From Haliotis rufescens (lineage: Eukaryota), in NCBI RefSeq assembly GCF_023055435.1, contig NW_025963857.1:20336001-20400000 (forward strand): a stretch of 64,000 nt of DNA. Direction: 5' to 3'. The translations under genes were made by a program, and so were the position numbers. The notes below the pieces were generated by a model. The model did not search any database, had not been told where the DNA came from, and was given only the letters and a program-made list of their open reading frames with translations. Within the stretch, counting starts at the first letter, position 1; each line of letters starts with the position of its first letter. This document shows positions 12,261 through 64,000 of this stretch, in pieces.

Positions 12261-12330
12261 CCGGAAAGTAACCCAGGTGTCACGTGACGTTTTCGTATAA
12301 TACCGCGAGAATTGCGGCGAGATGTCAGAG
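12261..12330 (+). promoter_or_regulatory. Putative core promoter of the giant gene
   Basis: CCGGAA ETS-like site at 12261, palindromic GTCACGTGAC E-box at 12279-12288, TATAA at 12296-12300, TCAG initiator-like site about 30 nt downstream, ATG at 12348. Confidence 0.45.
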
Positions 12331-12347: not shown

Positions 12348-12426
12348 ATGAACAGGGGCCTTTGTATAGCCCTGACTCTCATTGTCGCCACCCAGGCGTC
12401 GACAGTAAGAAAAAAGGAAGATCAAG
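12348..12426 (+). CDS. Exon 1: signal peptide MNRGLCIALTLIVATQASTVRKKEDQ
   Basis: ATG in gccatcATG context, hydrophobic core, donor G|gtaagt, phase 1. Confidence 0.8.
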
Positions 12427-15400
12427 GTAAGTGATCTTTTTATTTAAAAAAATGTTAGATACTAATACAATTTATTTAAAATGTAGCAACTACATTCAAT
12501 ACATGTAGCAACTCAAATGTGTCATTTATCACAATTTAAAGGATTATTGTTAACCCTTTTCGTGGTTCCAAATTAAAGCCAATACATCCGATTAAAATGA
12601 AAACATTTAAGACGTCGATAGAAAAATGTTATGGGGATTTATATCTACTGTATTTTGAGGGTTTACTTGATATGTACCCATGGATATTAAAATGCTAGTT
12701 TCTTAACATAAGGCGAACATAAGAAGGTATTTATAGCGAACATTTGGTATCATCACTATTTGATAGTGATTCATAAACTAATGCTTATGACAAAATCATA
12801 TTCATACAATGAACTCTGTTTTAGCAGCAATTTCGTATGATTGTGTACACGGTTTTGTAGCGTTTAATAATTAGAATTGAAGGTAGTTTAATATATTTCA
12901 ATTATATTCAACATATAAAAAACACGCTTTACACTATTTTTCTGAAGATGCACCTAACCACCTACATGGTACGCAGTTTTATTTGTACTATATATACAGT
13001 TGGAACATATTTAGTGTACAATTAGTCAGGACAAGTAATGGCAACATATGTTGTTTTAGAAACTTCTAGATTACAATAAAACAGTTGGTGTATCTCTCAG
13101 TATAGATAGACAAGGAAGGTCAGAGGTGTGCCTCAGTGTGGGTCACTGTTCATATACACGTAATGCGTTATCTAGCTTTGCCCCAGGTCCTATTTATAAG
13201 TACTTGCTGTATCTTGTAACTTTACGACAACAACAACAAAAACAACAACAAAGACCTCATTAAATAATAAACATTTTTTAAATATCTTTCATAAATGTTG
13301 ATACGATGTTTTGTAGAATGCACAAGAAGTTAATCAAAATTGAAAGCAATTTTATTTCAGAACCCAAACTAATCATATGTCCTTATGCCGTTTCAAAGAT
13401 CGACGTTTTATTTGGTTTTATTTAATGCAATGACACCGAAGCAAATGATCATTAACAAATGCAATTTTTTTTGTTCCAGAAAAAAGAGCGGCACCTACCG
13501 GTAAGTTAGAATCCTGAAGTAATATATACTGATATATAAGGTTTTTTTCTGTGAATAACGAACCAAAAGCATATAAATCACATCGAATACAACAAAGCGT
13601 TACACACCAACACGCCTATGATATATGTATTCTTGGCGTGGATGCAGTTTATGTCCAGACATTGGCCCTCGGTACAATATATTTCGACATCCAGTGAGTG
13701 GCATACACACGGAGATGGTTTCGAGCAAATTCCTTTGTGGCGATAGCAATGTACAAATCTCATACACTGGAAAACAATCGCTGAACAATGTTTTTTTTCT
13801 TAGTTTTTGATATAAGTCACATTTAGAATAATATGCTAAAACTAATGACAACTTAATTTCTGATTGCAAATGTCAGAATAAACTATTCTTGAATACTTGG
13901 TTAAGAGTGGGAAAATGTGAAGTGCTGTTACTGACGTTATCACTTGTGGTAACCGTTAAAACATCTAACACATGGTTCCAGCTGTCGTCGATCTTATCAC
14001 AGAAGAAACCATTCATATAGTTTCAGTACTCTTAATGCACACATAATAAACTTTGGTGTAATCATGTTACAGTCAGACACTTGAAAGACAAAACTATGCT
14101 TGTAAATACTGATTGCATTTAGTTTAATCCCATCTGAAGACAAAACTATGCTTGTAAATACTGATTGCATTTAGTTTAATCCGATCTGAAGACAAAACTA
14201 TGCTTGTAAATACTGATTGCATTTAGTTTAATCCGATCTGAAGACAAAACTATGCTTGTAAATACTGATTGCATTTAGTTTAATCCCATCTGAAGACAAA
14301 ACTATGCTTGTAAATACTGATTGCATTTAGTTTAATCCGATCTGAAGGTCATCTCCTGCAGTCCAAAGTCACGTAGCACAACATATGGTAACAGATCATC
14401 CCAACATGGTGGCCCAGTGCTATGGAACAATCTACGGTCGATCCCATCGGAAATATGAAAATCCGAAAATTCATACAAAAACGTAAAAAAACATATTGAC
14501 ACACCTGTCTCTCCAAGCAAGCCTTTCACTGGGCCTGAGATGGCCAGAACTTTAAGGCTGGAATTATATTAATTTAATTGCTTTTAATGGCGCGATGTTA
14601 TGGTACACGTTTCCGTGTCAGCTGCGCGTTTGTTGAAACGTAGTTGTCCATTTTTCAGTTGAAACATGCGTGGACCAAACCGACTGCACGAAGTACCCAA
14701 GCTCCGTGTGTACGCAATATAGCGACTGGTCCAAGGACAACTGTGCAGCATACTGTGGAATATGTAAACGTAAGTCTGACCTGCAATCTTTGTAAGTTCC
14801 CCGTGCAAGTGCATAGCCATTCTCATTGCCTCTGCATGGAATGGTTTAAACATGTTGTTCTCTGATGACTCTTTATATTCAAAGAAAATTGCTGATACAG
14901 ACAAGAATTATTATGAATTCCTGCACAATCCACAAAGACATGCCACTATTTAAAATGGCTATTTGATGGTCGCATCACTGTAGGAATTTTAACACGGAGA
15001 TATAAGCCCATAGATTTCAATATCAAATGTGGCAAAATGTTTTCTCCTTTTAATGATTGCTACTTCTACACCAACATGTATTCACATGACACCCTGACAA
15101 ATGAACATGAATGGTAATATTTCCGAATTAAAGAAGGAATGGAACGAATAATGAATGCAATGGCCACAAGGTGTCCAAAGAGCTGACACTCTCTGTTCAT
15201 CAATGGCTTCAGTGTTGAATGATTGTTCCAGCACTGCACACTACTGCTCCCCCAGCTTGTGAGGATAGTCTGACGAACTGTCCGGAGTACGGCCTGGACG
15301 CGTGCACCAAGTACGCTCCCTGGGCTCATGAGAACTGTCGCAAGTACTGTGGCTTCTGTCGTAAGTATGATCTCAAATAGAGTTACAGATTCTTTGTACC

Positions 15401-15504
15401 GGATATCAATACCGAAAAGCCAGTGACTGTCAACAAATGTGGTGTAAATTGAAAGTGGGTTTAACATTATTGTACTCTGCGAGTGTATGTGTGATTGTGT
15501 GTGT

Positions 15505-15535
<31 letters not shown>

Positions 15536-15848
15536 ATTGAGTGGTGTGTATGTGTGAGTGTNNNNNNNNNNNNNNNNNNNNNNNNNNNNNNNNNNNNNNN
15601 NNNNNNNNNNNNNNNNNNNNNNNNNNNNNNNNNNNNNNNNNNNNNNNNNNNNNNNNNNNNNNNNNNNNNNNNNNNNNNNNNNNNNNNNNNNNNNNNNNNN
15701 NNTGTGTGTGATTGAGTGATTGTGTGTGTGTGATTGAGTGATTGTGTGTGTGTGTGATTGAGTGATTGTGTGTGTGTGTGATTGAGTGATTTTGTGTGTG
15801 ATTGAGTGATTTTGTGTGTGTGATTGAGTGATTTTGTGTGATTGAGTG

Positions 15849-15922
<74 letters not shown>

Positions 15923-17555
15923 GTTGTGTGTCTGCTTCTACTAGTTGGGAATTATGCCGGTTTTAATTGCTGGCCCGTGCCACGAACCACAGATGCGGTC
16001 TCAACAAATGTAGAATGAATGAATGTTGGTGAATGCCGCATCAATATTCCAGCTATATGTAAACAGGTGACAGGAAGCAGGAGAACAGTAGACGATATAG
16101 GGCATGATGACACTTTGGCCAAGATGATTTGATGAATCTCTCAACATTACCAATCCATCGATACTTAAACACTTTGCATGTGGCCTTGATATACTTGTAT
16201 GTCACAGTGATGTAAAACACCACTCCCTCACTCGCCATGTCGTCATGTTATGATACTATCCTTTTTCTTCAGTGGATGAATGTGAAGATGGGTCGACATT
16301 TCGTTTTAGGTAGAAATGAACAAAACAAGCAAGTCAAGCTTATTGCTTAAATTTTTAGAACATAAACCTTTCTGTTTCCAGATATTCAGTCGACTGGGTT
16401 CTGTAAGTATAAGCTAAAGCGCTTTATTGTTTAAAATGGTTAGAAAATCGTAATAAAATGCATCGAATACTTCAAACGGTCTCTCTGGCAGATGTATGCA
16501 CCAAAACATCTTCTTTTAGACCTGTGCTGGTGCTTCTGTTAATTCTGTTGACCATATTTGGTTGCAATGACTATATTAAATTTTATTGACAACATATGGT
16601 TCCATAACTACATATTCTTAAAGTGACAATATGGACCTTTGTTCAATGTTCAACTGACTGTATATAATTCCATTCACGATATATGTTTCTATGGACTAAA
16701 TACATTGGTTTCCACAGAAACTTCTATTGACTATATATTGCTCTATTGTCTGTATATTTTTCTTAATGTATATTTTGTATCTGATCTAGTGCTCTACCGA
16801 GTATATATTCTCAAAAGAATTATTCTATGACACGTGGACATTTTGTTTTACACAGTTCACATAATGAACTGTTACTGAACAGAAACAACCTTCCATAACG
16901 TACGTAGTTGCATGTAACGTGCAGTGCTATGCAGTTCACCACCTTCTATGGTATGTGTGTTACTGCTGCTGTTACACGTGTCCTTCTGGTGCAATTAAAT
17001 GCGTCCTGATGCTGTACACGTGTCCTGTTGGTTCTATTACACGTGTCCTGCTGGTGCTATTACACGCACCCTGCTGGTGTGATTGCACGTGTCCTGCTGG
17101 TGTTATTACACGTGTCCTGTTGGTTCTATTACGCGTGTCCTGCTGGTGCTATTACACGTGCCCTGCTGGTGTGATTGCACGAGTCCTGCTGGTGTTATTA
17201 AACGTGTCCTGCTGGTGCTATTACACGTGTCCTGCTGGTGCTATTACACGTGCCCTGTTGGTGTGATTGCACGAGTCCTGCTGGTGTTATTACACGTGTC
17301 CTTTTGGTTCTATTACACGTGTCCTGCTGCTGCTAAAACATATGTGCTACTACTTTCTGCAGATGGCCAGTGCTCCTACAAAGGGAAGACTTACAATCAA
17401 GGAGAAAAATGGGAGGACGGCTGCAGCTACGACTGTGAGTGCGTGGACGGCGCGACTGGAACCTACAAGTGTACAAACAAGTATGTATAACCACACCTGC
17501 TACCACTACCACTACCATGACTACTACTACTATTACTACTTCCATCTACTTCCAT

Positions 17556-17590
<35 letters not shown>

Positions 17591-17591
17591 G

Positions 17592-17622
<31 letters not shown>

Positions 17623-17679
17623 CACAACCATGACGACTACTACTACTACTTCCATCTACTACTACTACAGCTACTACTG

Positions 17680-17713
<34 letters not shown>

Positions 17714-41568: not shown

Positions 41569-41628
<60 letters not shown>

Positions 41629-56600: not shown

Positions 56601-59600
56601 TGTTCCTACTCCCTGGCCAATCGGCTACACTCCTTATCCTGGTGCTACTCCCTACCCTGGACCAACACCTTACCCCATTGGATACACACCCTCTCCTGGC
56701 GCGACACCCTTCCACCTAGGAACCCCATGGCCAATAGGTTTCACCCCTTACTTAGGGGCTACGCCATACCCAGGACCTACACCTTATCCCATTGGTTACA
56801 CACCATCCCCTGGAGCCACACCTTACAAAGCACCAACACCATGGCCCATTGGCTACACTCCCTATCCTGGAGCAACGCCATACCCAGGACCAACGCCATA
56901 CCCTATTGGCTACACACCTTCACCTGGAGCAACACCGTACAGAGCACCAACACCATGGCCAATTGGTTTCACACCTTATCCCGGAGCAACACCATACCCA
57001 GGACCAACCAAATATCCAATTGGATTCACGCCATCTCCCGGAGCCACCCCGTATCTTGGACCAACCCCATACCCGATAGGCTACACACCATTCCCTGGTG
57101 CAACGCCATATCCTGGCCCAACTCCTTATCCTATTGGGTATACACCATCACCAGGTGCCACACCATACTTAGGACCAACACCATATCCAATTGGATTCGT
57201 TCCTTATCCTGGAGCCACCCCTTACCCAGGACCATCTAGGTGGCCAATTGGTTTTACTCCTTCACCTGGTGCCACGCCATACAAGGGACCCACTCCTTAT
57301 CCCATTGGCTACACCCCATGGCCAGGTGCAACACCCTACCCTGGACCAACACCCTATCCAATAGGCTTTACTCCCTCTGTCGGAGGAACACCCTATCTTG
57401 GACCTACACCTTACCCCATAGGATATGTTCCTTACCCCGGTGCTACTCCATATCCAGGCCCCAGCCCATATCCTATTGGATTCACACCCTATCCAGGCGC
57501 AACGCCATACCTTGGACCAACACCTTATCCCATCGGCTACACTCCATGGCCAGGTGCAACACCTTATCCAGGACCATCCAAATACCCCATTGGGTTCACA
57601 CCTTCCATTGGAGCCACTCCCTACCTTGGACCCACTCCGTATCCAATCGGATACACGCCTTACCCTGGAGCAACACCTTACCCAGGTCCAACACCTTATC
57701 CCATTGGATTCACACCCTCGCCTGGTGCCACACCGTATCACCTACCTACACCTTGGCCCATTGGTTACACACCATTCCCTGGTGCTACACCTTACCCCGG
57801 ACCAAGTAAGTATCCAATTGGATTTACCCCGAGTATAGGTGCCACACCATACCTTGGCCCAACTCCTTACCCAATAGGATTCGTACCCTACCTCGGTGCC
57901 ACCCCATACCCAGGACCATCCAAGTACCCTATTGGATTCATCCCATATCCAGGAGCTACTCGCTATTTGGGACCTACTCCTTGGCCAATCGGATTCACCC
58001 CATCAATAGGGGCAACACCATACCCTGGACCTTCTAAATATCCTTTCGGTTTCACGCCATACCCGGGGGCAACACCTTATCTCGGACCAACACCATACCC
58101 GATTGGTTACACACCATCAACTGGTGCTACACCTTACCCTGGACCATCTAGATATCCTATAGGTTTCACCCCATCACCTGGAGCTACGCCCTACCTCGGA
58201 CCAACGCCATACCCTATTGGTTTTGTGCCCTACCCTGGAGCAACTCCGTATCCAGGACCAACACCTATACCAGGTATGCCTTCTTCACCATGTGACATAA
58301 TAGAGCAGGGTACTGGTATCTCACACACGGTATTCAACGTAATGTTATTCAACATAAATTGTAATCTTGGAAAAAGTCTTATATTGCGTATTTTCCTATA
58401 AGAAATGAACGTGTGTAATTCAAAACATATAGTGTACATTGGTGTAAAGGTATAGAATCAAATGTTTAATATTTGTGTGTTTGTTTGTTGTTTAACGCCG
58501 CTCTCAGCAATATTCCAGCTACAAACGGCGGTCTGTAAATAATCGAGTCTGGACCAGACAATCCAGTGATTGACATCATGATCCATACAAATGAGATACA
58601 ATGACCACCCGTTCCCGTTAGTTGCCTCATTCGACAAGCATGGGTTGCTGAAGACTTATTTTAACCAAGATCTTCAAGGAGATTAATATTTCTTAGCTGG
58701 GGGCAAGTAAAGTAAGGTCAGCATTGTATTATTTTTGCTTAACTCCAGGCTATACACCAATGACGGGCGTGACACAAGCACCAGGACTTAAAGGTGAGTG
58801 TCAGCTATTGTATTACGTTGTGATGTTGTGACTCCTCAATCAGCGAAAATAAAATAACCGTGAAAAACAGTAAATGTAACAAACAAACCTCGGACAAAAA
58901 AATAATTATTTATTTCATTATCCCATTATTATAAACAGGACATATATGGGTTTTTCTTGTATAATCATTGTTGTAAATATCTGCCATATATGTGTTAACA
59001 TTGGTTTCCTCTTGACAATTACCTGTTGTCCCTCCATCTAGGCATGTGCGAGTACAACAACCAGTACTACAAGGAAGGCCAGCTGTGGTACGATGGCTGC
59101 AGCAAGGTGTGCCGCTGCGAGAGTGCCGACGTCAACTTCCACAGATGCCAGGACAGGTAGGATGACATACGGGTTTGAACATTGTTTGTTGTTTAATGCC
59201 TCACTCAGCAATATTCCAGCTTTATGACGGGGCCGTTCGCGGCCTGTCATCTTCCCGAGGCAAGGGAGTTAACTGACTATAAAAGTCCAGTTTCCACCCT
59301 TGCCGAACTAGGCTGGATTTATGGAGTTATATTTTTGCTCGACTAACAAGTCTATGCATAGTCCAATCAAAATCGCGTAACGAAATGAACATCCGGTTCG
59401 TAAACTGCGGTGCAGATTTCGGTCGACTGCAGGATTTGCAAAGCATGTGTACCGTCAACTTAGCATCAACAGATATTTTCCAATTTGTTGAGTTTTTAAT
59501 GAAGGTCCTCACGTGATTTGATGCACTTCGCGAAGTAAGACCCGTTTTATTACGATATAGATCTTGATTATCGATCAGATCATAATAATTTGTTTGAAGC

Positions 59601-62600
59601 AAATGCAAGTGATATCTGAGGTGGAATCTGATTAGTCAATATGAGAGACATAGGATGGGCATTACTCGTGGCGCTACGATCGAACCCAGAAATTCCGGCC
59701 TAGCTCAGTGATGTAACCGGCACAAAGGCACACTCACTGATTATTTCAGATGGTCGCTGGGGTTTCGGATATAACAGTTGAACGTCTTTGTTCCAGGTGC
59801 ACGAAGTATGACAGCATCCAGTCTGACTGCCTCATGGTGCCTGATCCTAAAGACCCGTCCTGCTGCAAGAAGCCTCAGTGTCCAGTCCCGACCCCTGCAC
59901 CAGGAGTGACGCCGACACCAGGGTTCATCTCCGTCACCCCCGCCCCTGGCTACATCAACGGCTACGGCAAACCCCCGACCATGGCGCCAGGTGTATCGCC
60001 ATCACCCGGATCCCAGCCCACACCCTCGCCTAGAGGTAACAAGGAGTAGTTCGTTATACATGGATCACCCGGTTACACAATAGGATTAGTGTCATCCCAG
60101 GATCAACTTCAAAACGTCCACCACGAATAGCTGCAATATTGCTGATGCAGAGTTAAGCAAATATCCCACACAGACACAGGATGACAGTGTGTGACACGTG
60201 ATAACAATCACCCAGCTCCCTACAACACAGTACTGACCCTTTACAAGTGTCACAATAACAACATCAGTTTGCTGATACCGTAAACTACCAAAGACAGCAA
60301 CCCTGGTCTAGTGGATAGAGCGTCAGTGNNNNNNNNNNNNNNNNNNNNNNNNNNNNNNNNNNNNNNNNNNNNNNNNNNNNNNNNNNNNNNNNNNNNNNNN
60401 NNNNNNNNNNNNNNNNNNNNNNNNNNNNNNNNNNNNNNNNNNNNNNNNNNNNNNNNNNNNNNNNNNNNNNNNNNNNNNNNNNNNNNNNNNNNNNNNNNNN
60501 NNNNNNNNNNNNNNNNNNNNNNNNNNNNNNNNNNNNNNNNNNNNNNNNNNNNNNNNNATGTACAAGGGCCAGGTCTACAACGAGGGACAGACGTGGGAAG
60601 ACGGATGCGACTTCGACTGTGAATGTCTGGATGATGCTACTGGCCAGTACAAGTGCCTCAAGAAGTGAGTCACCAACTATTTCACATCCTGGTATTCTTC
60701 CCTTTAGCCAGTCATTACTCTCGCTATGTCCTGATCCTGTTTGGGTTCATCACTGGCATTCTATCACGCATTACCACTCAAGTTTCTACATACCTCTCCC
60801 CTATATGTAAACATATTTCATATAGGTCGACATGATTATTTTGCAAATGTCAACTGTTCTCCCTAACGAATAATTATGTTAATAACATTTCTCTCGAAAT
60901 ATATTATAAGGTAAAATGCCCATATATTCGCCCCGAATGCACATAAACTGCGGTATTACTTACTGACCTGGACCCACTTGCACAAAGCAATTTCAGCGCT
61001 AAGACTATCTTAAGCCTATGTTAAAGTATGGGAATTACGATCATCTTAGCTCTAAGATCGCTTTGTGCAAGTGGGCCCTGGACATCTGAGGAGCAACAGA
61101 AGATATACTGAGGGGCAAGAGAAACTATATCTCTCAGCTGATATTATTATGTGTTTGATTTTCAATTGGAAATACTCGTATCTGAAGTTAGTCATATAAT
61201 ATACAAAAAAGATTAACTTTACTGGCGTATAGTCAGCACTCAAAGAATACTTCTACATGGTTTTCCTTTCAGAAATATAATTAATTTAAAACTTTAAAAA
61301 AATTAACTATTTTTTTTACAACTGCTGATGATTCTATTAGACATCTTATCTTTAAGAAAGTAAAGGCACAAAATTACAAAATTTCAAACATTTCACAAAC
61401 TGTTGCAGGAAGGCGTGATTGTTAATAGACATAATCAAATTTAACAACAGTTTCTTTTTTTCAATTTTCAATTACTTAAAAAACAAACTAGGTATACAGT
61501 AAACTACGTTTATAACGAACACGCTAATAACGAACTGACCGATGTAACGAACATCTTTTTTAGTCTCGATCATATATGCTGCATATATATGCTTATAACG
61601 AACTACGGTTATTACGAACTAAAATTAGTGGTCCCTTTGAATACGCTATAACCGTAGTTTACTGTACATATTTTGCCCTTCAGTTTATGTCAAGTTATCC
61701 ATAGTTCGAGGCAAACGGAGTGATGATATAAAATCCCATTTATAAAGATTCTACCATCTTACATTATATACCGTTATTTTATCACATCGACTTAAACGAT
61801 ATTTCGAATAAATTTGACTTTTGATTCAAAAGGTTTCATTGTGTCACTTCTAAATGCCATTCAAAGACATGTTAAATCTTTGTTCATCTGGACGTTGAAT
61901 ATCCTTTGTATTTATTCTCCAGGTGTCCGGCGGTGCCTCAGCTTCCGAACCGCTGTGTGATGCTCCGTGACCCGACCAATCCCTGCTGCCAGCGTCCATA
62001 CTGTGACTTCCTGAATCCCACTCCCTTCCCTGGCGGTATCCCCACCCCCAACCCGATCCTCAACCCCTCTCTCGGACCTAATCAACACACAACACAGAAA
62101 CCAGGCCCCGGTGTGTCTAATGCAGCCAATCACAACCCTAGTCAAAGCACTGGTAAGTGTTAAAGACATCATGGTAATGACATCGAGTCATACATAAAGG
62201 CTTGAGGACCAGAAGTAACACATGACAAATACGCCACATTGGATTTTCCCTTTCGTCAACATCTTGATTAAAGATCCCGCAAAACAAACAATTACTAAAG
62301 TAAACAAGGTAGCGTTGCTTGTGTTCTATTACGAAGTGCCAACAACCGTGAAGTGTATGAAGTTTACAAAGTTTGTTAATAACGTGCAAATATATCATTC
62401 TGTAGCTGTCCTTCCATTGGAGAAGGTTCAGGCAAACTGGCACACAAGGATCCAATTCAACGTCTGTGGATTGAAAATGAGCAACAGACAATGGAACATA
62501 GTACCCCTTTAATATAACCATACATTTAAATATTATAAACAGTGGCATCTAAAACTGTGAGGAAAAGGTATGTGGGTCCGAATTTGAAAAAATAACTTTC

Positions 62601-63534
62601 CTGACACTACCATGTCTTTACGCACTGCTGTTATATTCCCGTCCTCGTCCAGGCTTCTGCGTATACAAGGGGGTGCCGTACCACAAAGGTCAGACATGGA
62701 GCGATGCCTGTGACAAGACGTGTGTGTGTGACGATCCTACCAACAACCTCTACACGTGCAGAGATAGGTCAGTTTTGTTTGTTTGTTTGTTTGTTTGTTT
62801 GTATGTTGTTTAACGCCGCACTCAGCAATATTCCAGCTTTATGACGGCGGTCTGTAAATAATTGAGTCTGGACCAGACAATCCTGTGAATGATATGATGA
62901 GCATCGGGTTAGTTAAAAACCCGATCTCCGAGAATATAAGTAAAAGTTAAATGTTTGCAAATCAGTTCACTCAATGTCGAAATCTTGTCTTACCGTGAGT
63001 CGTGGCGTGTCAGTGTATTGTCGTGGCGTGTCAGTGTTGTCGTGGCGTGTCAGTGTAGTGTCGTGGCGTGTCGTGGTGTGTCAGTGTAGTGTCGTGGCGT
63101 GTCGTGTCAGTGTAATGTCGTGGCGTGGCGTGTCAGTGTAGTGTCGTGGCGTAGCGTGTCAGTGTAGTGTCGTAGCGTGAGAGTGGATTGTCAATGAGTG
63201 TGATGTCACTCACTCACTCACTCGTTTACTTGCAGGTGTTCCTCCTTCAACAACCTCGCTCCCACGTGTACTCTCGAGACTGACCCCAACGACCCATGCT
63301 GTGTCGTCCCCGACTGCAATCACCTCCCTCCATTAAGTCTTACCCCCAACACACTCCCCGGCATCAACGGAACCAACAATCCTCTGAACCCCAATCCTTC
63401 CTACGGCCCCGGCTTCACTGGTCACCCCACGTACATCCAACCAACCAGCATCCCAGGCACCTTCACTGGTAATACTGGGTTCGGACCTGGTTACCCCGGA
63501 CAACAAGTCGGTGGATTGGTAGCTGGAATGAGAA
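12348..63534 (+). CDS. Giant secreted multi-exon protein: signal peptide, 3x ShKT, 24x VWC-like modules with Pro/Thr/Gly linkers, one ~1,600-aa Pro-Thr-Tyr-Gly repeat block; 3'-incomplete
   Basis: 56 exons with GT..AG boundaries whose phases chain without a stop (module junctions phase 1, intra-module introns phase 2). Hand-summed CDS about 12,904 nt, assuming 115 nt for the gap-truncated exon. Conserved Cys/Trp patterns in every module. Confidence 0.9.
13480..13500 (+). CDS. Exon 2: 21-nt micro-exon (EKRAAPT)
   Basis: ttttttgttccag| ... G|gtaagt, phase 1-1. Confidence 0.7.
14084..14347. repeat. 52-bp tandem repeat x5 (intronic)
   Basis: gacaaaactatg at 14087, 14139, 14191, 14243, 14295. 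Confidence 0.95.
14659..14769 (+). CDS. Exon 3: ShKT domain 1
   Basis: ETCVDQTDCTKYPSSVCTQYSDWSKDNCAAYCGICK; 6 Cys ending C-x3-C-x2-C; phase 1-1. Confidence 0.88.
15232..15360 (+). CDS. Exon 4: ShKT domain 2
   Basis: LHTTAPPACEDSLTNCPEYGLDACTKYAPWAHENCRKYCGFC; 129 nt, phase 1-1. Confidence 0.88.
15482..15920. repeat. (GT)n / GTGATTGA compound microsatellite with N-gap
   Basis: Direct inspection. Confidence 0.95.
16382..16402 (+). CDS. Exon 5: 21-nt micro-exon (HIQSTGF)
   Basis: tctgtttccag| ... T|gtaagt, phase 1-1. Confidence 0.6.
16970..17335. repeat. 23-bp minisatellite (acacgtgtcctgctggtgctatt), ~15 copies
   Basis: Direct inspection; ends just before the module 1A acceptor. Confidence 0.9.
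17363..17480 (+). CDS. VWC module 1 exon A
   Basis: GQCSYKGKTYNQGEKWEDGCSYDCECVDGATGTYKCTN; 118 nt, phase 1-2. Confidence 0.9.
17490..18056. repeat. (ACT)n trinucleotide microsatellite with N-gap
   Basis: Direct inspection. Confidence 0.95.
18056..18290 (+). mobile_element. Interspersed repeat family D (SINE-like, (AAAC)n tail)
   Basis: gtcg[c/t]aagaggcgactaacgggatcgggtggtcagg...gcggcgttaaacaacaaac; other copies at ~19223, 26457(-), 42520(-), 48394, 49100, 58478(-), 62775(-). Confidence 0.8.
18334..18476 (+). CDS. VWC module 1 exon B
   Basis: CPIYNSLPPACTLVSTPGQCCLQPVCDF..; phase 2-1. Confidence 0.9.
18520..19010. repeat. 64-bp minisatellite, ~7.5 copies
   Basis: ttcctagcaca recurs every 64 bp. 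Confidence 0.92.
19223..19445 (+). mobile_element. Family D repeat copy
   Basis: Similar to the 18056 copy. Confidence 0.78.
19525..20377. repeat. 85-bp minisatellite, ~10 copies, ending in the module 2A acceptor
   Basis: Direct inspection; shadow ORFs recur at 255-bp (3 x 85) spacing. Confidence 0.95.
20378..20492 (+). CDS. VWC module 2 exon A
   Basis: VCVYNGNNYYQGQTWAVGCDLRCTCNDATQGSYRCQS; 115 nt. Confidence 0.9.
20806..20968 (+). mobile_element. SINE family C copy at the start of the 51-bp array
   Basis: Full head and tail; a degenerate array unit lies upstream at ~20748-20790. Confidence 0.85.
20975..23135. repeat. 51-bp minisatellite, ~42 copies, composed of 3' splice-site sequence
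   Basis: Unit ttgttcacaatcttccatCTAACtaaaacatccctctctcttgtgttgtAG; last copy is the real acceptor at 23135. Confidence 0.97.
23136..23275 (+). CDS. VWC module 2 exon B
   Basis: CPVYGQMPTDCVMIKDPGQCCERPQCTF..; donor gtcagt. Confidence 0.85.
23684..23812 (+). CDS. ShKT domain 3 exon
   Basis: LHPTAASACVDKIPNCADYTKEACPKYPGWAGSTCKKYCDLC; 129 nt like exon 4. Confidence 0.88.
24866..24895 (+). CDS. 30-nt micro-exon (HLAAPTPGPN)
   Basis: ctctgttaccag| ... G|gtaagc, phase 1-1. Confidence 0.7.
25344..25458 (+). CDS. VWC module 3 exon A
   Basis: ACVYQGQAHKQGETWAIGCDQRCVCENAIYGYYRCSN; 115 nt. Confidence 0.9.
26175..26410 (+). CDS. VWC module 3 exon B
   Basis: CPSYTNLPPQCKTDKKVNDCCETVKC + Gly/Ser/Thr linker. 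Confidence 0.88.
26457..26702 (-). mobile_element. Family D repeat copy
   Basis: Reverse complement; flanked by ctttggg(g)tgatgt on both sides. Confidence 0.8.
27127..27241 (+). CDS. VWC module 4 exon A
   Basis: GCLYNGQLYVQNQQWEDKCATVCTCNDASTGIYACRE; 115 nt. Confidence 0.9.
27545..27680 (+). mobile_element. SINE family C copy
   Basis: Similar to the 3652 element. Confidence 0.78.
27986..28257 (+). CDS. VWC module 4 exon B
   Basis: CPKFDGVPAGCQMTPDPSDKCCTVPQC + linker. Confidence 0.88.
28632..29470. repeat. 41-bp minisatellite, ~20 copies
   Basis: ccgaaacgtagccttgattgaacaatgcactagtatctgt[a/g]. Confidence 0.95.
29610..29724 (+). CDS. VWC module 5 exon A
   Basis: FCEYKGRHYLQSERWEDGCKYQCVCERAYDGFWRCLD; 115 nt. 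Confidence 0.9.
29871..30153 (+). mobile_element. SINE family A copy
   Basis: ggttcgaatccc B-box, (ACTC)n tail, ccagta flanking both ends. Confidence 0.85.
30695..30894 (+). CDS. VWC module 5 exon B
   Basis: CKTYDDLPKDVCWLIPDPSDSCCQVPFC + linker. Confidence 0.88.
31229..31343 (+). CDS. VWC module 6 exon A
   Basis: YCVYKGQNYAQGQQWYDGCSMKCSCDNAQSGYYRCAN; 115 nt. Confidence 0.9.
31951..32144 (+). CDS. VWC module 6 exon B
   Basis: CPLYYNVPKGCTQLPDPIDPTCCTVPHCDF + linker. Confidence 0.88.
32340..32520. repeat. 53-bp tandem repeat, ~3.5 copies, resembling the module 7A exon start
   Basis: tacaagatgac at 32354, 32407, 32460. Confidence 0.8.
32547..32661 (+). CDS. VWC module 7 exon A
   Basis: YCLYKTKKYNQGQKWTDGCQYTCECEDADKGSYRCTD; 115 nt. 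Confidence 0.9.
33398..33546 (+). CDS. VWC module 7 exon B
   Basis: CPRYASLPQQCRLVTDFSNPCCQVPDCNF; 149 nt. Confidence 0.88.
33571..33847 (-). mobile_element. SINE family A copy
   Basis: Reverse complement of the 29871 element. Confidence 0.8.
34433..34547 (+). CDS. VWC module 8 exon A
   Basis: TCTYITAKYYQGQTWKDGCSKSCRCEDAVKGLYVCDD; 115 nt. Confidence 0.9.
35155..35363 (+). CDS. VWC module 8 exon B
   Basis: CPKFGSIPSQCQMVTDPADPCCQKPQC; AAG acceptor. Confidence 0.86.
35582..35696 (+). CDS. VWC module 9 exon A
   Basis: VCTYKGQQYHKGQTWVDGCSYNCECLDDQTGKYKCTE; 115 nt. Confidence 0.9.
35727..35892 (+). mobile_element. Young SINE family C copy with 13-bp TSD
   Basis: TSD taaacagggctgc at 35714 and 35893. 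Confidence 0.92.
36297..36457 (+). CDS. VWC module 9 exon B
   Basis: CPRFAGLPPQCNLMKDPSDPCCQVPVCDF. Confidence 0.88.
36604..36866 (-). mobile_element. SINE family A copy
   Basis: Similar to family A on the reverse strand. Confidence 0.78.
37369..37483 (+). CDS. VWC module 10 exon A
   Basis: MCVYKGTSYATGQQWFDGCDYTCECENGDQGIYRCNK; 115 nt. Confidence 0.9.
38029..38282 (+). CDS. VWC module 10 exon B
   Basis: CAVYDNLPKGCHLEADPQDPFCCKRPTC + Pro-rich linker. Confidence 0.88.
38452..38745 (+). mobile_element. Diverged SINE family B copy
   Basis: tRNA-like head, ggactggtcggctcggagtcag core, cacctc tail. Confidence 0.7.
38904..39018 (+). CDS. VWC module 11 exon A
   Basis: VCVYKGKQYAQGQKWQDGCVYNCECLDAHTGKYKCTE; 115 nt. 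Confidence 0.9.
39358..39506 (+). CDS. VWC module 11 exon B
   Basis: CPRYAQIPAQCHLVRDIYNPCCQKPYCDF; 149 nt. Confidence 0.88.
39791..39905 (+). CDS. VWC module 12 exon A
   Basis: FCVYNGTPFKQGATWNDGCDLACRCEDAKTGVYRCDE; 115 nt. Confidence 0.9.
40551..40777 (+). CDS. VWC module 12 exon B
   Basis: CASFQVQPGCSLIADPKDVCCKVPSC; 227 nt. Confidence 0.88.
41283..41397 (+). CDS. VWC module 13 exon A
   Basis: FCTYNNINYKTGQKWDDGCQYSCVCDDEKTGRYTCVQ; 115 nt. Confidence 0.9.
41570..41624. repeat. (CT)n microsatellite
   Basis: Direct inspection. Confidence 0.97.
41697..41866 (+). CDS. VWC module 13 exon B
   Basis: CAPYSNIPAYCTLVVDPTEPCCKKPSC. Confidence 0.88.
42711..42881 (-). mobile_element. Young SINE family C copy with TSD
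   Basis: TSD tctcgaacat(ga) on both sides. Confidence 0.92.
42950..43064 (+). CDS. VWC module 14 exon A
   Basis: SCVYKNQQYFEGQEWYDGCDKKCVCEDAKTNYYRCSS; 115 nt. Confidence 0.9.
43271..43497 (+). CDS. VWC module 14 exon B
   Basis: CASFGKVPPQCRLVADPKDPQCCQVPQC; 227 nt. Confidence 0.88.
43543..43865. mobile_element. Probable Tc1/mariner-type MITE
   Basis: Inverted repeat acaaaagaaacgcgaa (43553) / ttcgcgtttcttttgt (43840). Confidence 0.55.
44138..44252 (+). CDS. VWC module 15 exon A
   Basis: SCVYKGRDYRQGERWQDGCKYNCICEDETTGKYKCDE; 115 nt. Confidence 0.9.
44906..45057 (+). CDS. VWC module 15 exon B
   Basis: CASYPFVPPQCTLQRDLTDICCHKLACDF; 152 nt. Confidence 0.88.
45208..45601. repeat. 68-bp minisatellite, ~5.8 copies
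   Basis: ctcctatagtg at 45261, 45329, 45397, 45465, 45533. Confidence 0.95.
45775..45889 (+). CDS. VWC module 16 exon A
   Basis: FCVYKGVVYNQNQVWTEGCDRKCRCDDADTNFYNCYD; 115 nt. Confidence 0.9.
46154..46380 (+). CDS. VWC module 16 exon B
   Basis: CPSYNNPPPGCTLIVDPKDPCCKVPQC; 227 nt. Confidence 0.88.
47050..47164 (+). CDS. VWC module 17 exon A
   Basis: YCVYKGVKYTQGQTWQDGCGMNCECLDDSTGQYKCTE; 115 nt. Confidence 0.9.
47625..47839 (+). mobile_element. 5'-truncated SINE family A copy abutting the module 17B acceptor
   Basis: Family A body; tail ctcactcac ends about 12 nt before the acceptor. Confidence 0.78.
47852..48018 (+). CDS. VWC module 17 exon B
   Basis: CPNYVNIPSYCILVQDPRDNCCKTPTC. Confidence 0.88.
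48394..48618 (+). mobile_element. Family D repeat copy
   Basis: Similar to the 18056 copy. Confidence 0.8.
48703..48817 (+). CDS. VWC module 18 exon A
   Basis: VCVYNGRSYTQGQEWYDGCEKKCVCEDGMTGFVRCTD; 115 nt. Confidence 0.9.
49009..49096. repeat. (GTGTA)n microsatellite
   Basis: Direct inspection. Confidence 0.97.
49100..49357 (+). mobile_element. Family D repeat copy
   Basis: Similar to the 18056 copy, (AACC)n tail. Confidence 0.8.
49410..49639 (+). CDS. VWC module 18 exon B
   Basis: CAKFNSIAPNCVMVPDAKDPTCCLAPQC; AAG acceptor. Confidence 0.86.
50116..50230 (+). CDS. VWC module 19 exon A
   Basis: VCVYKGTPYKQGQRWQDGCDYTCVCEDGTTGKYDCTD; 115 nt. Confidence 0.9.
50624..50775 (+). CDS. VWC module 19 exon B
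   Basis: CPRYPNMPYYCTMAYDPTNPCCQKPEC; 152 nt. Confidence 0.88.
51268..51382 (+). CDS. VWC module 20 exon A
   Basis: FCAYNGIPYRQGQSWPVGCDKVCRCEDAMANTINCDD; 115 nt. Confidence 0.9.
51945..52132 (+). CDS. VWC module 20 exon B
   Basis: CASYPQTPSDCVLITDPSDKCCQVPSC. Confidence 0.88.
52952..53066 (+). CDS. VWC module 21 exon A
   Basis: VCVYNGKSYHQGEKWEDGCTYDCECIDSADGKYRCTE; 115 nt. Confidence 0.9.
53313..58273 (+). CDS. VWC module 21 exon B plus giant Pro-Thr-Tyr-Gly repeat (4,961-nt exon, ~85 x 19 aa)
   Basis: ttgcag|G TGC CCG.. (CPAFPQVPSYCTMMQDSRDKCCEVPYC) then repeats of GP[T/S][P/K]YPIG[Y/F]TP[Y/S/W/F]PGATPY[P/L]; donor CCAG|gtatgc; lies within the 1702-aa ORF of the track. Confidence 0.92.
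58749..58793 (+). CDS. 45-nt linker exon (GYTPMTGVTQAPGLK)
   Basis: aactccag| ... AAAG|gtgagt, phase 1-1; continues the GYTP motif. Confidence 0.8.
59042..59156 (+). CDS. VWC module 22 exon A
   Basis: MCEYNNQYYKEGQLWYDGCSKVCRCESADVNFHRCQD; 115 nt. Confidence 0.9.
59797..60035 (+). CDS. VWC module 22 exon B
   Basis: CTKYDSIQSDCLMVPDPKDPSCCKKPQC + linker. Confidence 0.88.
60558..60664 (+). CDS. VWC module 23 exon A (5' end hidden in N-gap; predicted start ~60550)
   Basis: MYKGQVYNEGQTWEDGCDFDCECLDDATGQYKCLK, donor gtgagt. Confidence 0.85.
60967..61081. mobile_element. Short palindromic MITE
   Basis: cccacttgcacaaagc / gctttgtgcaagtggg terminal inverted repeat, cctgg at both ends. Confidence 0.7.
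61495..61666. mobile_element. Tc1/pogo-type MITE with TA target site
   Basis: TA-CAGTAAACTACG ... CGTAGTTTACTG-TA. Confidence 0.8.
61923..62152 (+). CDS. VWC module 23 exon B
   Basis: CPAVPQLPNRCVMLRDPTNPCCQRPYCDF + linker. Confidence 0.88.
62653..62767 (+). CDS. VWC module 24 exon A
   Basis: FCVYKGVPYHKGQTWSDACDKTCVCDDPTNNLYTCRD; 115 nt. Confidence 0.9.
62993..63180. repeat. GTGTC/GTGGC-based low-complexity tandem repeat
   Basis: Direct inspection. Confidence 0.85.
63236..63534 (+). CDS. VWC module 24 exon B
   Basis: CSSFNNLAPTCTLETDPNDPCCVVPDC + linker; donor gtgagt, so the gene continues. Confidence 0.88.
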
Positions 63535-63576
63535 GTGAGTGCACCTGGTTCTCGTGAATTAACTGCTATGAGTGTT

Positions 63577-63731
63577 TTAGTGGATAGAGCGTCTGCCGGA
63601 GAGCTGAAGGTCGTTGGTTCGATCCCCGGCCGCGTCATAATAAAAAACGTTTAAAGATGGTAAGTGTTGCATTAAGGGGGTACTGTGTCTAAGTAAGGTA
63701 TCCATGTTAAATTTCGGCATGGTACCTCGGT
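63577..63731 (+). mobile_element. Partial SINE family B copy
   Basis: tagtggatagagcgtc..ggttcgatccccggccgcgtcata. Confidence 0.7.
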
Positions 63732-63774
63732 GTTTTTTTCTCTTCCTCCTGTTTACAGTTTAGATCTAAACCTC

Positions 63775-64000
63775 AGCTGTATATTGCTGGTGCATGATAG
63801 CCGTTGTATATTGCTGCTGTGTATGGTGGATATATAATGAAAATGTATTTTGGATGTGCGTGATAACCGTATAAAGCGACTGTATAAAAATCGTTGTTGA
63901 CTGCAGCTGTATAATAACCGTTGTATACTGTGGCTGTATAATAACCGTTGTATACTGTGGCTGTATAATAACCGTTGTAAACTGCGGCTGTATAATAACC
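63775..64000. repeat. ~27-bp tandem repeat running off the window end
   Basis: ctgtataataaccgttgtatactgtgg units. Confidence 0.85.

What the first reader, a model, noticed from the sequence alone, without database searches (positions are those of the whole stretch)
12348..63534. Giant secreted ShKT + 24x VWC + tyrosine/proline-repeat protein, probably an uncharacterised structural or gel-forming biopolymer
Seen: 56 phase-compatible exons give over 4,300 aa, running signal peptide, ShKT-ShKT-VWC-VWC-ShKT, then 22 more VWC-like modules (C-x-Y-x-G-x2-Y-x2-G-x2-W-x-DGC-x3-C-x-C..C..C..C..CC..C) with P/T/G linkers and a ~1,600-aa PTYG block. Known: VWC arrays occur in kielin/chordin, gel-forming mucins and matrix proteins; ShKT domains occur in secreted invertebrate proteins. 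Inference: I do not recognise this combination as a named gene. It looks like a mucus, adhesive or shell/egg-coat matrix scaffold with disulfide-rich beads and a cross-linkable rod. The ORF track hides most of it because exon A is only 38 codons.
Basis: partly seen in the sequence, partly recalled or inferred. Interest (0 to 1): 0.85.

Follow-up and report, generated by a model that had tools for sequence, protein, structure and literature searches.

The report
Giant secreted abalone matrix protein gene
The window holds the first 56 of 78 exons of a real, intact red-abalone gene, already in RefSeq as an unnamed "uncharacterized protein", for a 5,431-residue secreted protein made of 31 disulfide-locked VWC beads and a half-micron proline/tyrosine rod; it belongs to a mollusc-wide family that nobody has studied.

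Summary
On the + strand, 56 GT-AG exons (12348-63534) encode a signal peptide, ShKT-ShKT-VWC-VWC-ShKT, 22 more VWC modules and a 1,643-residue Pro/Gly/Thr/Tyr block. Each VWC is split into a 115-nt exon A and a variable exon B.

It is not the whole gene. The window is Haliotis rufescens, and the gene is RefSeq LOC124133941 (XP_048253644.1, 5,431 aa, "uncharacterized protein"). That protein maps exactly onto 78 exons running about 16 kb past the window. The full product has 31 VWC, 6 ShKT and an unnamed C-terminal domain of about 190 aa.

Two assembly gaps are intronic; the third clips the first ~8 nt of exon A23.

The same scaffold occurs in other gastropods and in bivalves, always unnamed or auto-named.

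The rod is 84 units of 19 aa. It is saturated at synonymous sites, 95% identical with no indel between abalone species, and has the same 38-aa consensus in a Gigantopelta paralog.

All cysteines are accounted for within domains, and no VWD or CTCK was found, so "gel-forming mucin" is not supported.

Best reading: a secreted beads-on-a-rod structural matrix protein.

The scan had already noted the rod exon on this same window (s1-810269).

The parts
12296..12302 (+). TATA-like heptamer 46 nt upstream of the ATG (possible core promoter)
   Evidence: Read directly. This is only a consensus resemblance, so it is an inference.
12348..12426 (+). Exon 1: start codon and signal peptide (26 codons + 1 nt, phase-1 donor gtaagt)
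   Evidence: 87.5% identical to the N-terminus of the H. rubra ortholog.
13480..13500 (+). Exon 2, a 21-nt linker micro-exon
   Evidence: Exact mapping of P0192.
14659..14769 (+). Exon 3, ShKT domain 1
   Evidence: Six-Cys pattern. Pfam ShK 16.3 bits, below the 20.9 cut-off.
15232..15360 (+). Exon 4, ShKT domain 2
   Evidence: Pfam ShK 28.3 bits, above the cut-off.
15562..15702 (.). Assembly gap inside intron 4
   Evidence: No ortholog residues are missing across it.
16382..16402 (+). Exon 5, a 21-nt micro-exon
17363..23275 (+). VWC modules 1-2. Exons 6-9: 17363-17480, 18334-18476, 20378-20492, 23136-23275
17746..17959 (.). Assembly gap inside intron 6, between the two exons of VWC1
   Evidence: Residues 160 and 161 of P0192 flank it with nothing missing.
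23684..23812 (+). Exon 10, ShKT domain 3
   Evidence: Pfam ShK 18.8 bits, plus the six-Cys pattern.
24866..24895 (+). Exon 11, a 30-nt micro-exon
25344..53394 (+). VWC modules 3-21 (exons 12-48 plus the first 82 nt of exon 49). A exons start at 25344, 27127, 29610, 31229, 32547, 34433, 35582, 37369, 38904, 39791, 41283, 42950, 44138, 45775, 47050, 48703, 50116, 51268 and 52952, each 115 nt. B exons start at 26175, 27986, 30695, 31951, 33398, 35155, 36297, 38029, 39358, 40551, 41697, 43271, 44906, 46154, 47852, 49410, 50624, 51945 and 53313.
   Evidence: Exon table. Alignments A1 and A4. A halves match Pfam VWC positions 1-31 and the CCN3 VWC chain.
53395..58273 (+). Rod: the rest of the 4,961-nt exon 49, holding 84 units of 19 aa in a/b alternation (38-aa super-repeat); part of the 1,643-aa Cys-free stretch between VWC21 and VWC22
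   Evidence: AlphaFold gives no fold.
58749..58793 (+). Exon 50, a 45-nt linker exon
59042..63534 (+). VWC modules 22-24. Exons 51-56: 59042-59156, 59797-c.60037, (gap)60558-60664, 61923-62152, 62653-62767, 63236-63534
60329..60557 (.). Assembly gap in intron 52 that also removes the acceptor and the first ~8 nt of exon A23
   Evidence: It is the only one of 77 introns whose GT-AG could not be read.
63535..64000 (+). Start of intron 56. The gene goes on for 22 more exons beyond the window (7 VWC, 3 ShKT, the C-terminal domain, then 2 VWC and the stop)
   Evidence: A dispersed short repeat sits at about 63573-63670.

Best explanation
What it is. This is one intact gene, Haliotis rufescens LOC124133941. 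It has 78 exons over about 68 kb, and exons 1-56 lie in the window. The product is a 5,431-residue secreted extracellular protein.

Domain order. Signal peptide; ShKT x2; VWC x2; ShKT; VWC x19; a rod of 84 units of 19 aa (consensus ATPYPGPTPYPIGFTPSPG, alternating with a Leu/Tyr variant); VWC x8; ShKT x3; a conserved unnamed domain of about 190 aa; VWC x2.

Most likely function. It is a structural component of a secreted matrix, built as beads on a string.
- Each VWC is a small bead locked by five internal disulfides.
- The beads are joined by 23-109-residue Pro/Thr/Gly/Ser linkers that probably stay extended and may carry O-glycans.
- The central rod is an unfolded or polyproline-II-like stretch of fixed length. 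If fully extended it would be roughly 0.5 micrometre long.
- About 220 tyrosines in the rod give it aromatic/proline stickiness, or sites for enzymatic cross-linking (DOPA or dityrosine).
- The ShKT clusters and the C-terminal domain plus two VWC are the conserved ends, and most likely mediate assembly or anchoring.

Shown here: gene structure, domain identities, conservation, the selection pattern on the rod, and the absence of free cysteines.

Inferred: secretion, disulfide pairing, rod conformation and length, cross-linking, and the structural role.

Unknown: tissue and partner molecules.
For: One real gene.
- P0192 maps exactly on 78 exons, and 76 of 77 introns are GT-AG.
- The gene is collinear with H. 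rubra (about 84% identity per exon; about 90% over the whole protein), H. asinina and Gigantopelta proteins.

VWC identity.
- Ten invariant Cys.
- Exon-A halves hit Pfam VWC positions 1-31 of 57 at about 19 bits and the CCN3 VWC chain at E 3.5e-4.
- The Gigantopelta ortholog scores 73.3 bits for VWC with a full-length 1-56/57 match.
- A modelled family member superposes on the CCN3 and collagen IIA VWC structures.

ShKT.

No intermolecular disulfide handle. The 351 Cys equal 31x10 + 6x6 + 4 (C-terminal domain) + 1 (signal peptide).

The rod is under strong constraint.
- Identity among units by codon position is 0.91 / 0.82 / 0.38; dN/dS is about 0.11 and dS about 1.6.
- Rod length is 1643 / 1642 / 1643 aa in three abalone species, at 95% identity, with zero indels against H. 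asinina.
- Orthologous units are 95% identical, against 79% between units within one species. The whole protein is only 89-90% identical.
- The a/b consensus is nearly the same in a Gigantopelta paralog.
- AlphaFold gives no fold: pLDDT 29.6 and no secondary structure.

Family scaffold. It is conserved in gastropods and bivalves, often with a 0.5-1.9 kaa Pro/Thr/Gly/Tyr rod.

Literature lead.
- VWC-only 'kielin/chordin-like' proteins top the Argonauta eggcase matrix proteome, and are reported from Lottia and Crassostrea shells (bioRxiv 10.1101/2021.07.10.451900).
- A 6xVWC protein of unknown role is in the C. gigas shell proteome (PMC5854119).
Against: No expression, splicing or protein evidence for this gene could be obtained here. 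The tissue and the matrix are therefore guesses.

The H. laevigata nacre/prismatic proteome paper mentions no VWC or ShK protein in its text.

The link between the shell or eggcase 'kielin/chordin-like' proteins and this family was not tested.

VWC domains in chordin-type proteins bind BMPs, so a signalling role is not excluded.

Cross-linking of the tyrosines is pure inference.
Confidence: 0.55

Rival explanations
1. A mucin-like lubricant or hydrated-gel protein. The Pro/Thr-rich linkers and rod would be densely O-glycosylated and the VWC beads would be ends and spacers, as in secreted mucins.
For: Thr is 14% and Pro 32% of the rod, and the linkers are P/T/G/S-rich. NCBI auto-names relatives 'mucin-2-like' and 'mucin-19'. 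ShKT plus a mucin domain is known from nematode Tc-MUC proteins, as discussed in PMC7333891.
Against: No VWD, C8, TIL or CTCK appears in Pfam scans of the ortholog, nor in the precomputed domains of the 90% cluster representative. No unpaired Cys is available for polymerisation. Unlike mucin VNTRs, the rod has a fixed unit number and is more conserved than the rest of the protein. Ser is only 4%.
Confidence: 0.15
2. An extracellular BMP/TGF-beta-binding regulator or ligand sink, working like kielin/chordin-like protein, chordin or crossveinless-2 through its many VWC (chordin-type CR) modules.
For: The modules are bona fide VWC. An oyster relative is auto-named 'kielin/chordin-like protein'.
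Against: There is no CHRD domain and no C-terminal VWD. The 1,643-aa Tyr/Pro rod, the ShKT clusters and the paralogs carrying VWA pairs fit matrix proteins better. No binding determinant could be tested.
Confidence: 0.1
3. An immune or clotting matrix protein. The C-terminal domain would act as a fibrinogen-related or intelectin-like lectin, and the VWC array would act as in arthropod single-VWC immune proteins or hemolectin-type clot proteins.
For: The C-terminal domain has weak fold resemblance to intelectin-1 (Z 6.3, rmsd 4.5, 162 aligned) and to several fibrinogen-like domains (Z 4.5-4.8). The nearest named Atlas clusters are intelectin and Fibrinogen_C, at 0.82-0.84. The authors of PMC5854119 speculate on an immune role for a 6xVWC oyster protein.
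Against: All the resemblances are below the tools' own trust levels (Z under 8, score under 0.9). There is no Pfam hit for the domain. TLDc domains score almost as well.
Confidence: 0.07
4. Not a single functional gene: a mis-merged gene model, or a decaying array of duplicated exons.
For: Transcript support could not be inspected. One exon is clipped by an assembly gap.
Against: There are no stops or frameshifts in 78 exons, and phases are consistent throughout. The same 31-VWC order is kept in three other species. Purifying selection acts on the rod.
Confidence: 0.02

Closest known systems
RefSeq LOC124133941 / XP_048253644.1 (Haliotis rufescens) and its orthologs XP_046570033.1 (H. rubra), XP_067652804.1 (H. 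asinina) and XP_041376878.1 (Gigantopelta aegis)
   Same: This is the gene itself (exact 78-exon mapping) together with collinear orthologs that have 31 VWC and the rod after VWC21.
   Different: All are automatic predictions called 'uncharacterized protein', and no paper in the library cites them. The Gigantopelta model lacks the N-terminus, and its rod is shorter (480 aa) and Tyr-poor.
Paralogous molluscan VWA-ShKT-VWC giants (e.g. H. rufescens LOC124148430, Gigantopelta LOC121389362; Mytilus, Mya, Crassostrea and Littorina relatives), auto-named 'collagen alpha-4(VI)-like', 'mucin-2-like' or 'kielin/chordin-like'
   Same: They share the scaffold ShKT x2 - VWC x2 - ShKT - about 27 VWC - ShKT x3 - C-terminal domain - VWC x2. 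Several have a Pro/Thr/Gly/Tyr rod, and two have the same 38-aa super-repeat.
   Different: Most start with about 400 aa of VWA domains. This gene has none, and no VWA-coding sequence lies within 12 kb upstream. In bivalves the rod sits at a different position, after VWC 10-12.
Kielin/chordin-like protein, chordin, crossveinless-2/BMPER
   Same: Secreted proteins with tandem VWC (chordin-type cysteine-rich) modules.
   Different: Those have 4-18 VWC plus CHRD or VWD domains and act on BMP signalling (background knowledge). Here there are 31 VWC, ShKT, a Tyr/Pro rod and no CHRD or VWD.
Lustrin A of Haliotis rufescens nacre (Shen et al. 1997, listed in the references of PMC5854119)
   Same: Same animal and same design idea: cysteine-rich modules alternating with proline-rich spacers in an elastomeric matrix protein (background knowledge).
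   Different: It has a different cysteine-rich module. No Pfam family other than VWC/ShK (plus weak FnI/TILa look-alikes) was hit at E up to 1 on the exons or up to 0.01 on the ortholog. Lustrin A is about a quarter of the size, with a Gly/Ser domain and a protease-inhibitor-like end (background knowledge).
Gel-forming mucins and von Willebrand factor
   Same: Very large secreted proteins with VWC modules and a long Pro/Thr-rich central region.
   Different: The VWD-C8-TIL assemblies and the CTCK knot that polymerise mucins are absent. There is no spare cysteine, and the rod is not length-variable.
Tyr/Pro tandem-repeat structural proteins: mussel foot protein-1, plant extensins, resilin
   Same: Short Pro- and Tyr-rich tandem units without a globular fold. 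In those proteins the tyrosines are cross-linked or turned into DOPA (background knowledge).
   Different: There is no sequence homology. Those proteins lack flanking VWC/ShKT arrays. Any modification of this rod is untested.

Membership tests
VWC / chordin-type cysteine-rich repeat (Pfam PF00093) | Ten conserved cysteines, including a C-x(2-3)-C-x-C cluster and a CC-x(n)-C cluster | tested here: met
   Alignments of 23 exon-A and 24 exon-B peptides. C1-C5 and C6-C10 are invariant. The spacings are C-x3-C-x-C and CC-x4-C.
VWC / chordin-type cysteine-rich repeat (Pfam PF00093) | Profile match above Pfam's gathering score | tested here: inconclusive
   Exon by exon, the A halves give about 19 bits against a 27.6 cut-off (profile positions 1-31 only), and the B halves give nothing. 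The ortholog P0001 gives 73.3 bits with a full 1-56/57 match. The 90% cluster representative that includes this gene's protein carries precomputed PF00093.
VWC / chordin-type cysteine-rich repeat (Pfam PF00093) | Fold like solved VWC domains | tested here: met
   Tested on family member P0050, not on this gene. Its VWC models match CCN3 VWC (TM 0.66 on the target; Z 5.0, 65 of 70 residues aligned) and collagen IIA VWC (TM 0.65; Z 4.1). By sequence it matches 5nb8 at E 3e-7. The window's exon-A profile hits 5nb8 at E 3.5e-4.
ShKT / SXC domain (Pfam PF01549) | Six-cysteine pattern and a profile match | tested here: met
   All six copies have the six-Cys pattern. The Pfam scores of the three in-window copies are 28.3 (above the 20.9 cut-off), 18.8 and 16.3 bits.
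Gel-forming mucin / VWF type | VWD-C8-TIL assemblies and a C-terminal cystine knot for disulfide polymerisation | tested here: not met
   Pfam on ortholog P0001 lists only VWC and ShK. The precomputed domains of the cluster representative list only PF00093. All Cys are accounted for within domains.
Kielin/chordin-like, chordin, crossveinless-2 | CHRD domains or a C-terminal VWD next to the VWC array; BMP binding | tested here: not met
   No CHRD or VWD hit was found. BMP binding is not testable with these tools.
Molluscan VWA-ShKT-VWC giant family (unnamed) | Order ShKT x2 - VWC x2 - ShKT - long VWC array - ShKT x3 - conserved C-terminal domain - VWC x2 | tested here: met
   The same order is seen in about 25 gastropod and bivalve proteins. 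The C-terminal domain was recognised at E 1e-40 to 1e-160. This gene lacks only the N-terminal VWA pair.
Fibrinogen-related / intelectin-like domain (for the C-terminal domain, which lies outside the window) | FReD fold and profile match | tested here: inconclusive
   No Pfam hit. Atlas scores of 0.82-0.84 are only leads. VIA-align gives Z 6.3 for intelectin-1 and 4.5-4.8 for fibrinogen-like domains, with TLDc at 5.4; all are under the tool's trust level.

The most novel reading that the evidence does not exclude
The family may be a major, so far unrecognised fibre or scaffold protein of molluscan extracellular matrices. It may be the source of the 'kielin/chordin-like' VWC fragments that dominate some shell and eggcase proteomes.

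Its 38-aa Pro/Tyr super-repeat may be a new kind of sequence-frozen, length-controlled extracellular rod, acting as a molecular ruler or elastomer. Each of the 84 units is individually conserved, rather than homogenised as in ordinary repeat proteins.
Probability: 0.3. Interest if true: 0.75.

Novelty: new variant of a known kind. Interest (0 to 1): 0.48.

Why it matters
Abalone is a classic model for tough biological composites, and H. rufescens gave the field lustrin A. Yet this 5,431-residue secreted protein and its relatives across gastropods and bivalves have no name, no paper and no known tissue.

The rod is unusual for a low-complexity repeat:
- It has 84 units with no gain or loss between abalone species.
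- It is 95% identical at the protein level while synonymous sites are saturated.
- The same 38-residue consensus occurs in a distantly related vent snail.

That pattern argues for a precise structural job rather than a filler or mucin spacer. It also gives biomaterials research a defined, testable motif: polyproline-II content, coacervation, tyrosine cross-linking and single-molecule elasticity.

For annotation, the case shows how a 68-kb gene made of 115-nt exons escapes ORF-based views, although it was already captured by RefSeq.

Tried and rejected
Transcript evidence.
- A word search with exon B4 for short ORFs that might come from cDNA contigs found nothing.
- The one Logan member of the protein cluster (P0193) reads into the intron, so it is genomic, not cDNA.

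Exon-B halves alone. They give no Pfam hit and only a chance-level PDB hit. Their assignment rests on the Cys pattern and on full-domain matches in relatives.

Rod fold. AlphaFold with a pseudo-alignment of six in-register rod segments gave pLDDT 29.6.

Protein Atlas on P0192. A 434-aa relative (P0050) was used instead.

Literature.
- An accession search found nothing.
- The limpet adhesive proteome (PMC7333891) has VWD, EGF and one ShKT protein, but nothing of this architecture.
- The text of the H. laevigata shell proteome has no VWC or ShK protein.
- The abalone-mucus searches were unhelpful.

Rejected readings.
- Lustrin-type module: no such Pfam hit.
- Hidden VWA exons upstream: tblastn found none.
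- Toxin reading of the ShKT domains: they sit inside a 5,431-aa matrix-type protein.

Joined model. Exons were searched one by one by reference. The full-length view comes from the public protein returned by the tools.

Full report
1. WHAT IS IN THE SEQUENCE

A motif scan of all six frames finds the exon-A signature (W..DGC...C.C) and the exon-B signature (CC..P.C) only on the + strand, in strict alternation from 17.4 kb to 63.3 kb. The only exceptions are two chance matches on the - strand inside the repeat exon.

Each readable exon A has a pyrimidine-rich AG acceptor and a GT donor. Within the window 22 are exactly 115 nt, A1 is 118 nt, and A23 is cut by an assembly gap. Introns before A exons are phase 1, and the intron between A and B is phase 2, always between the fifth and sixth cysteine. 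Each module is therefore a phase-1/phase-1 cassette.

Exon 1 (12348-12426) starts with ATG and encodes a typical signal peptide. A TATA-like heptamer lies 46 nt upstream.

2. IDENTITY OF THE GENE

The window is G000:C79:20336001-20400000, on a contig of 32,824,957 bases.

A profile of the A peptides, searched against 1.84 billion proteins, found 634 relatives. The best was a 4,135-aa Gigantopelta aegis protein with 31 matched stretches. Searching onward from that protein found 5.4-kaa abalone proteins.

One cluster member is XP_048253644.1, 'uncharacterized protein LOC124133941 [Haliotis rufescens]' (P0192, 5,431 aa). It lies on a contig of exactly 32,824,957 bases.

P0192 maps residue for residue (5,406 of 5,431 residues; the remainder are split codons) onto 78 exons. 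They run from window position 12348 to a stop about 16.2 kb beyond the window end. I read that downstream sequence from the same contig. Seventy-six of 77 introns are GT-AG, and the remaining one abuts a gap.

Position 63534 is a donor, not the end of the gene.

Exons were searched singly by reference, and the full-length view comes from the public protein that the tools returned.

3. ASSEMBLY GAPS (TESTED FIRST, AS ASKED)

- 15562-15702 lies in intron 4.
- 17746-17959 lies in intron 6.
- Across both, consecutive residues of P0192 and of the H. rubra ortholog flank the gap with nothing missing.
- 60329-60557 lies in intron 52 and also removes the acceptor and about the first 8 nt of exon A23, including its first Cys codon.
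- The orthologs are collinear across that gap, so no exon is lost.

4. DOMAINS

Exon by exon:
- The three in-window ShKT exons score 16.3, 28.3 and 18.8 bits against Pfam ShK (cut-off 20.9).
- The A halves match Pfam VWC positions 1-31 of 57 at about 19 bits (cut-off 27.6).
- The B halves alone match nothing.

Supporting evidence for VWC:
- The A profile hits the solved CCN3 VWC domain at E 3.5e-4.
- The Gigantopelta ortholog scores 73.3 bits for VWC with a full-length match.
- The 90% cluster representative that includes this protein carries PF00093.
- A 434-aa family member was modelled (mean pLDDT 65.5; 70-88 in the domains). Its VWC modules superpose on the CCN3 and collagen IIA VWC structures.

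The complete architecture is: signal peptide; ShKT x2; VWC x2; ShKT; VWC x19; rod; VWC x8; ShKT x3; a domain of about 190 aa; VWC x2.

The 351 cysteines equal 31x10 + 6x6 + 4 + 1 (the last in the signal peptide). No odd cysteine is left for intermolecular disulfides.

No VWD, C8, TIL, CTCK, CHRD or VWA was found.

5. THE C-TERMINAL DOMAIN (OUTSIDE THE WINDOW)

It is conserved in nearly all family members. It has no Pfam match. It resembles intelectin and fibrinogen-like folds only weakly: Atlas scores 0.82-0.84; Z 6.3 and 4.5-4.8, with TLDc at 5.4. I treat this as a lead only.

6. THE ROD

Structure and composition:
- Exon 49 (53313-58273, 4,961 nt) encodes the second half of VWC21, then 84 units of 19 aa.
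- 81 units have exactly that length.
- Two unit types alternate, giving a 38-aa super-repeat.
- Composition is Pro 31.8%, Gly 15.1%, Thr 14.1% and Tyr 13.7%.

Selection within the gene:
- Identity among units is 0.91 and 0.82 at codon positions 1 and 2, but 0.38 at position 3.
- dN/dS is about 0.11, with dS about 1.6.

Conservation between species:
- The Cys-free stretch is 1,643, 1,642 and 1,643 aa in H. rufescens, H. rubra and H. asinina.
- It is 95% identical, with no indel against H. asinina.
- The whole protein is only 89-90% identical.
- Units at the same position in two species are 95% identical, against 79% for different units within one species.
- So there is no concerted evolution. 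Each unit is conserved individually.

Wider distribution of the motif:
- A VWA-bearing paralog in H. rufescens and one in Gigantopelta carry virtually the same a/b consensus.
- Several bivalve relatives have 0.6-1.9-kaa rods of similar flavour at another position in the array.

Fold: AlphaFold predicts none (pLDDT 29.6, no secondary structure). That fits an extended or polyproline-II-like chain. At about 0.31 nm per residue it would be roughly 0.5 micrometre long, which is my inference.

7. THE FAMILY

About 25 long gastropod and bivalve proteins share one order: (VWA pair) - ShKT x2 - VWC x2 - ShKT - about 27 VWC - ShKT x3 - C-terminal domain - VWC x2.

This gene is the version without the VWA pair. 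No VWA-coding sequence lies in the 12 kb upstream.

The H. rufescens genome has further clusters of exon-A-like sequences on another contig, at about 5.0 Mb and 17.5-17.7 Mb.

Database names for relatives are automatic and inconsistent: 'uncharacterized', 'collagen alpha-4(VI)-like', 'mucin-2-like', 'mucin-19', 'kielin/chordin-like' and 'cysteine-rich motor neuron 1'.

8. FUNCTION

No direct evidence could be obtained:
- A search for short cDNA-derived ORFs found nothing.
- No paper holds the accessions.

From the anatomy I commit to a secreted structural matrix protein built as beads on a string with a fixed-length Tyr/Pro rod (confidence 0.55).

Published leads fit a matrix role for the family, but I did not verify them for this gene:
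- VWC-only 'kielin/chordin-like' proteins are the most abundant entries in the Argonauta eggcase matrix, and are reported from Lottia and Crassostrea shells.
- A 6xVWC protein of unknown role is in the C. gigas shell proteome.
- Against a shell role, the text of the H. laevigata shell proteome mentions no VWC protein.

Rival readings:
- Mucin-like gel: weakened by the lack of polymerising domains and by the frozen rod.
- BMP-binding regulator.
- Lectin-type immune or clot protein.
- Mis-merged gene model.

9. VERDICT

The gene is already annotated publicly but is uncharacterised. It is longer than the finding and belongs to a wide molluscan family.

The most interesting new point is the behaviour of the rod. 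Interest is moderate (0.48). The gene is built from known domain types and is present in RefSeq, but the family and its repeat are unstudied and experimentally approachable.

Noticed in passing
window 20957-23092 (intron 8, between the two exons of VWC2): A long tandem minisatellite. It yields a spurious 711-aa ORF on the - strand and ends just before the productive acceptor at 23135. The scan's note s1-810340 reads it as an array of 3' splice-site-like units.
   Followed up: no
window 16868-17360 and 19410-20440: Two further intronic tandem repeats lie directly upstream of exons A1 and A2. They give long Cys-rich pseudo-ORFs in several + frames that could be mistaken for coding sequence.
   Followed up: no
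window c.63573-63670 (intron 56): A short dispersed repeat, 84-90% identical to dozens of copies on many contigs of the genome. It overlaps a 101-aa ORF on the - strand and looks like a SINE-type element.
   Followed up: partly
window 12281-12286: A palindromic CACGTG (E-box-like) hexamer lies about 10 nt upstream of the TATA-like heptamer of the gene's putative promoter.
   Followed up: no
L006:9416-9763 (about 12 kb downstream of the gene's stop) and G000:C79:20303410-20303514 (about 32 kb upstream of the window): An isolated ShKT-like open segment lies downstream, and an isolated exon-A-like match lies upstream. These may be further small family members or relics flanking the gene.
   Followed up: no
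G000:C101 c.5.00-5.06 Mb and c.17.54-17.69 Mb: Two dense clusters of exon-A-like matches (about 33 and about 45) on the - strand. Presumably they are the giant paralogs, among them the VWA-bearing LOC124148430, whose rod has the same 38-aa super-repeat.
   Followed up: partly
P0050 (434 aa, JGI/IMG contig of 1,523 nt): A family member's C-terminal part (ShKT, C-terminal domain, two VWC) is encoded without introns on a short metagenome-collection contig. It is probably cDNA-derived, which would indicate that some family member is transcribed and spliced in an environmental sample.
   Followed up: no
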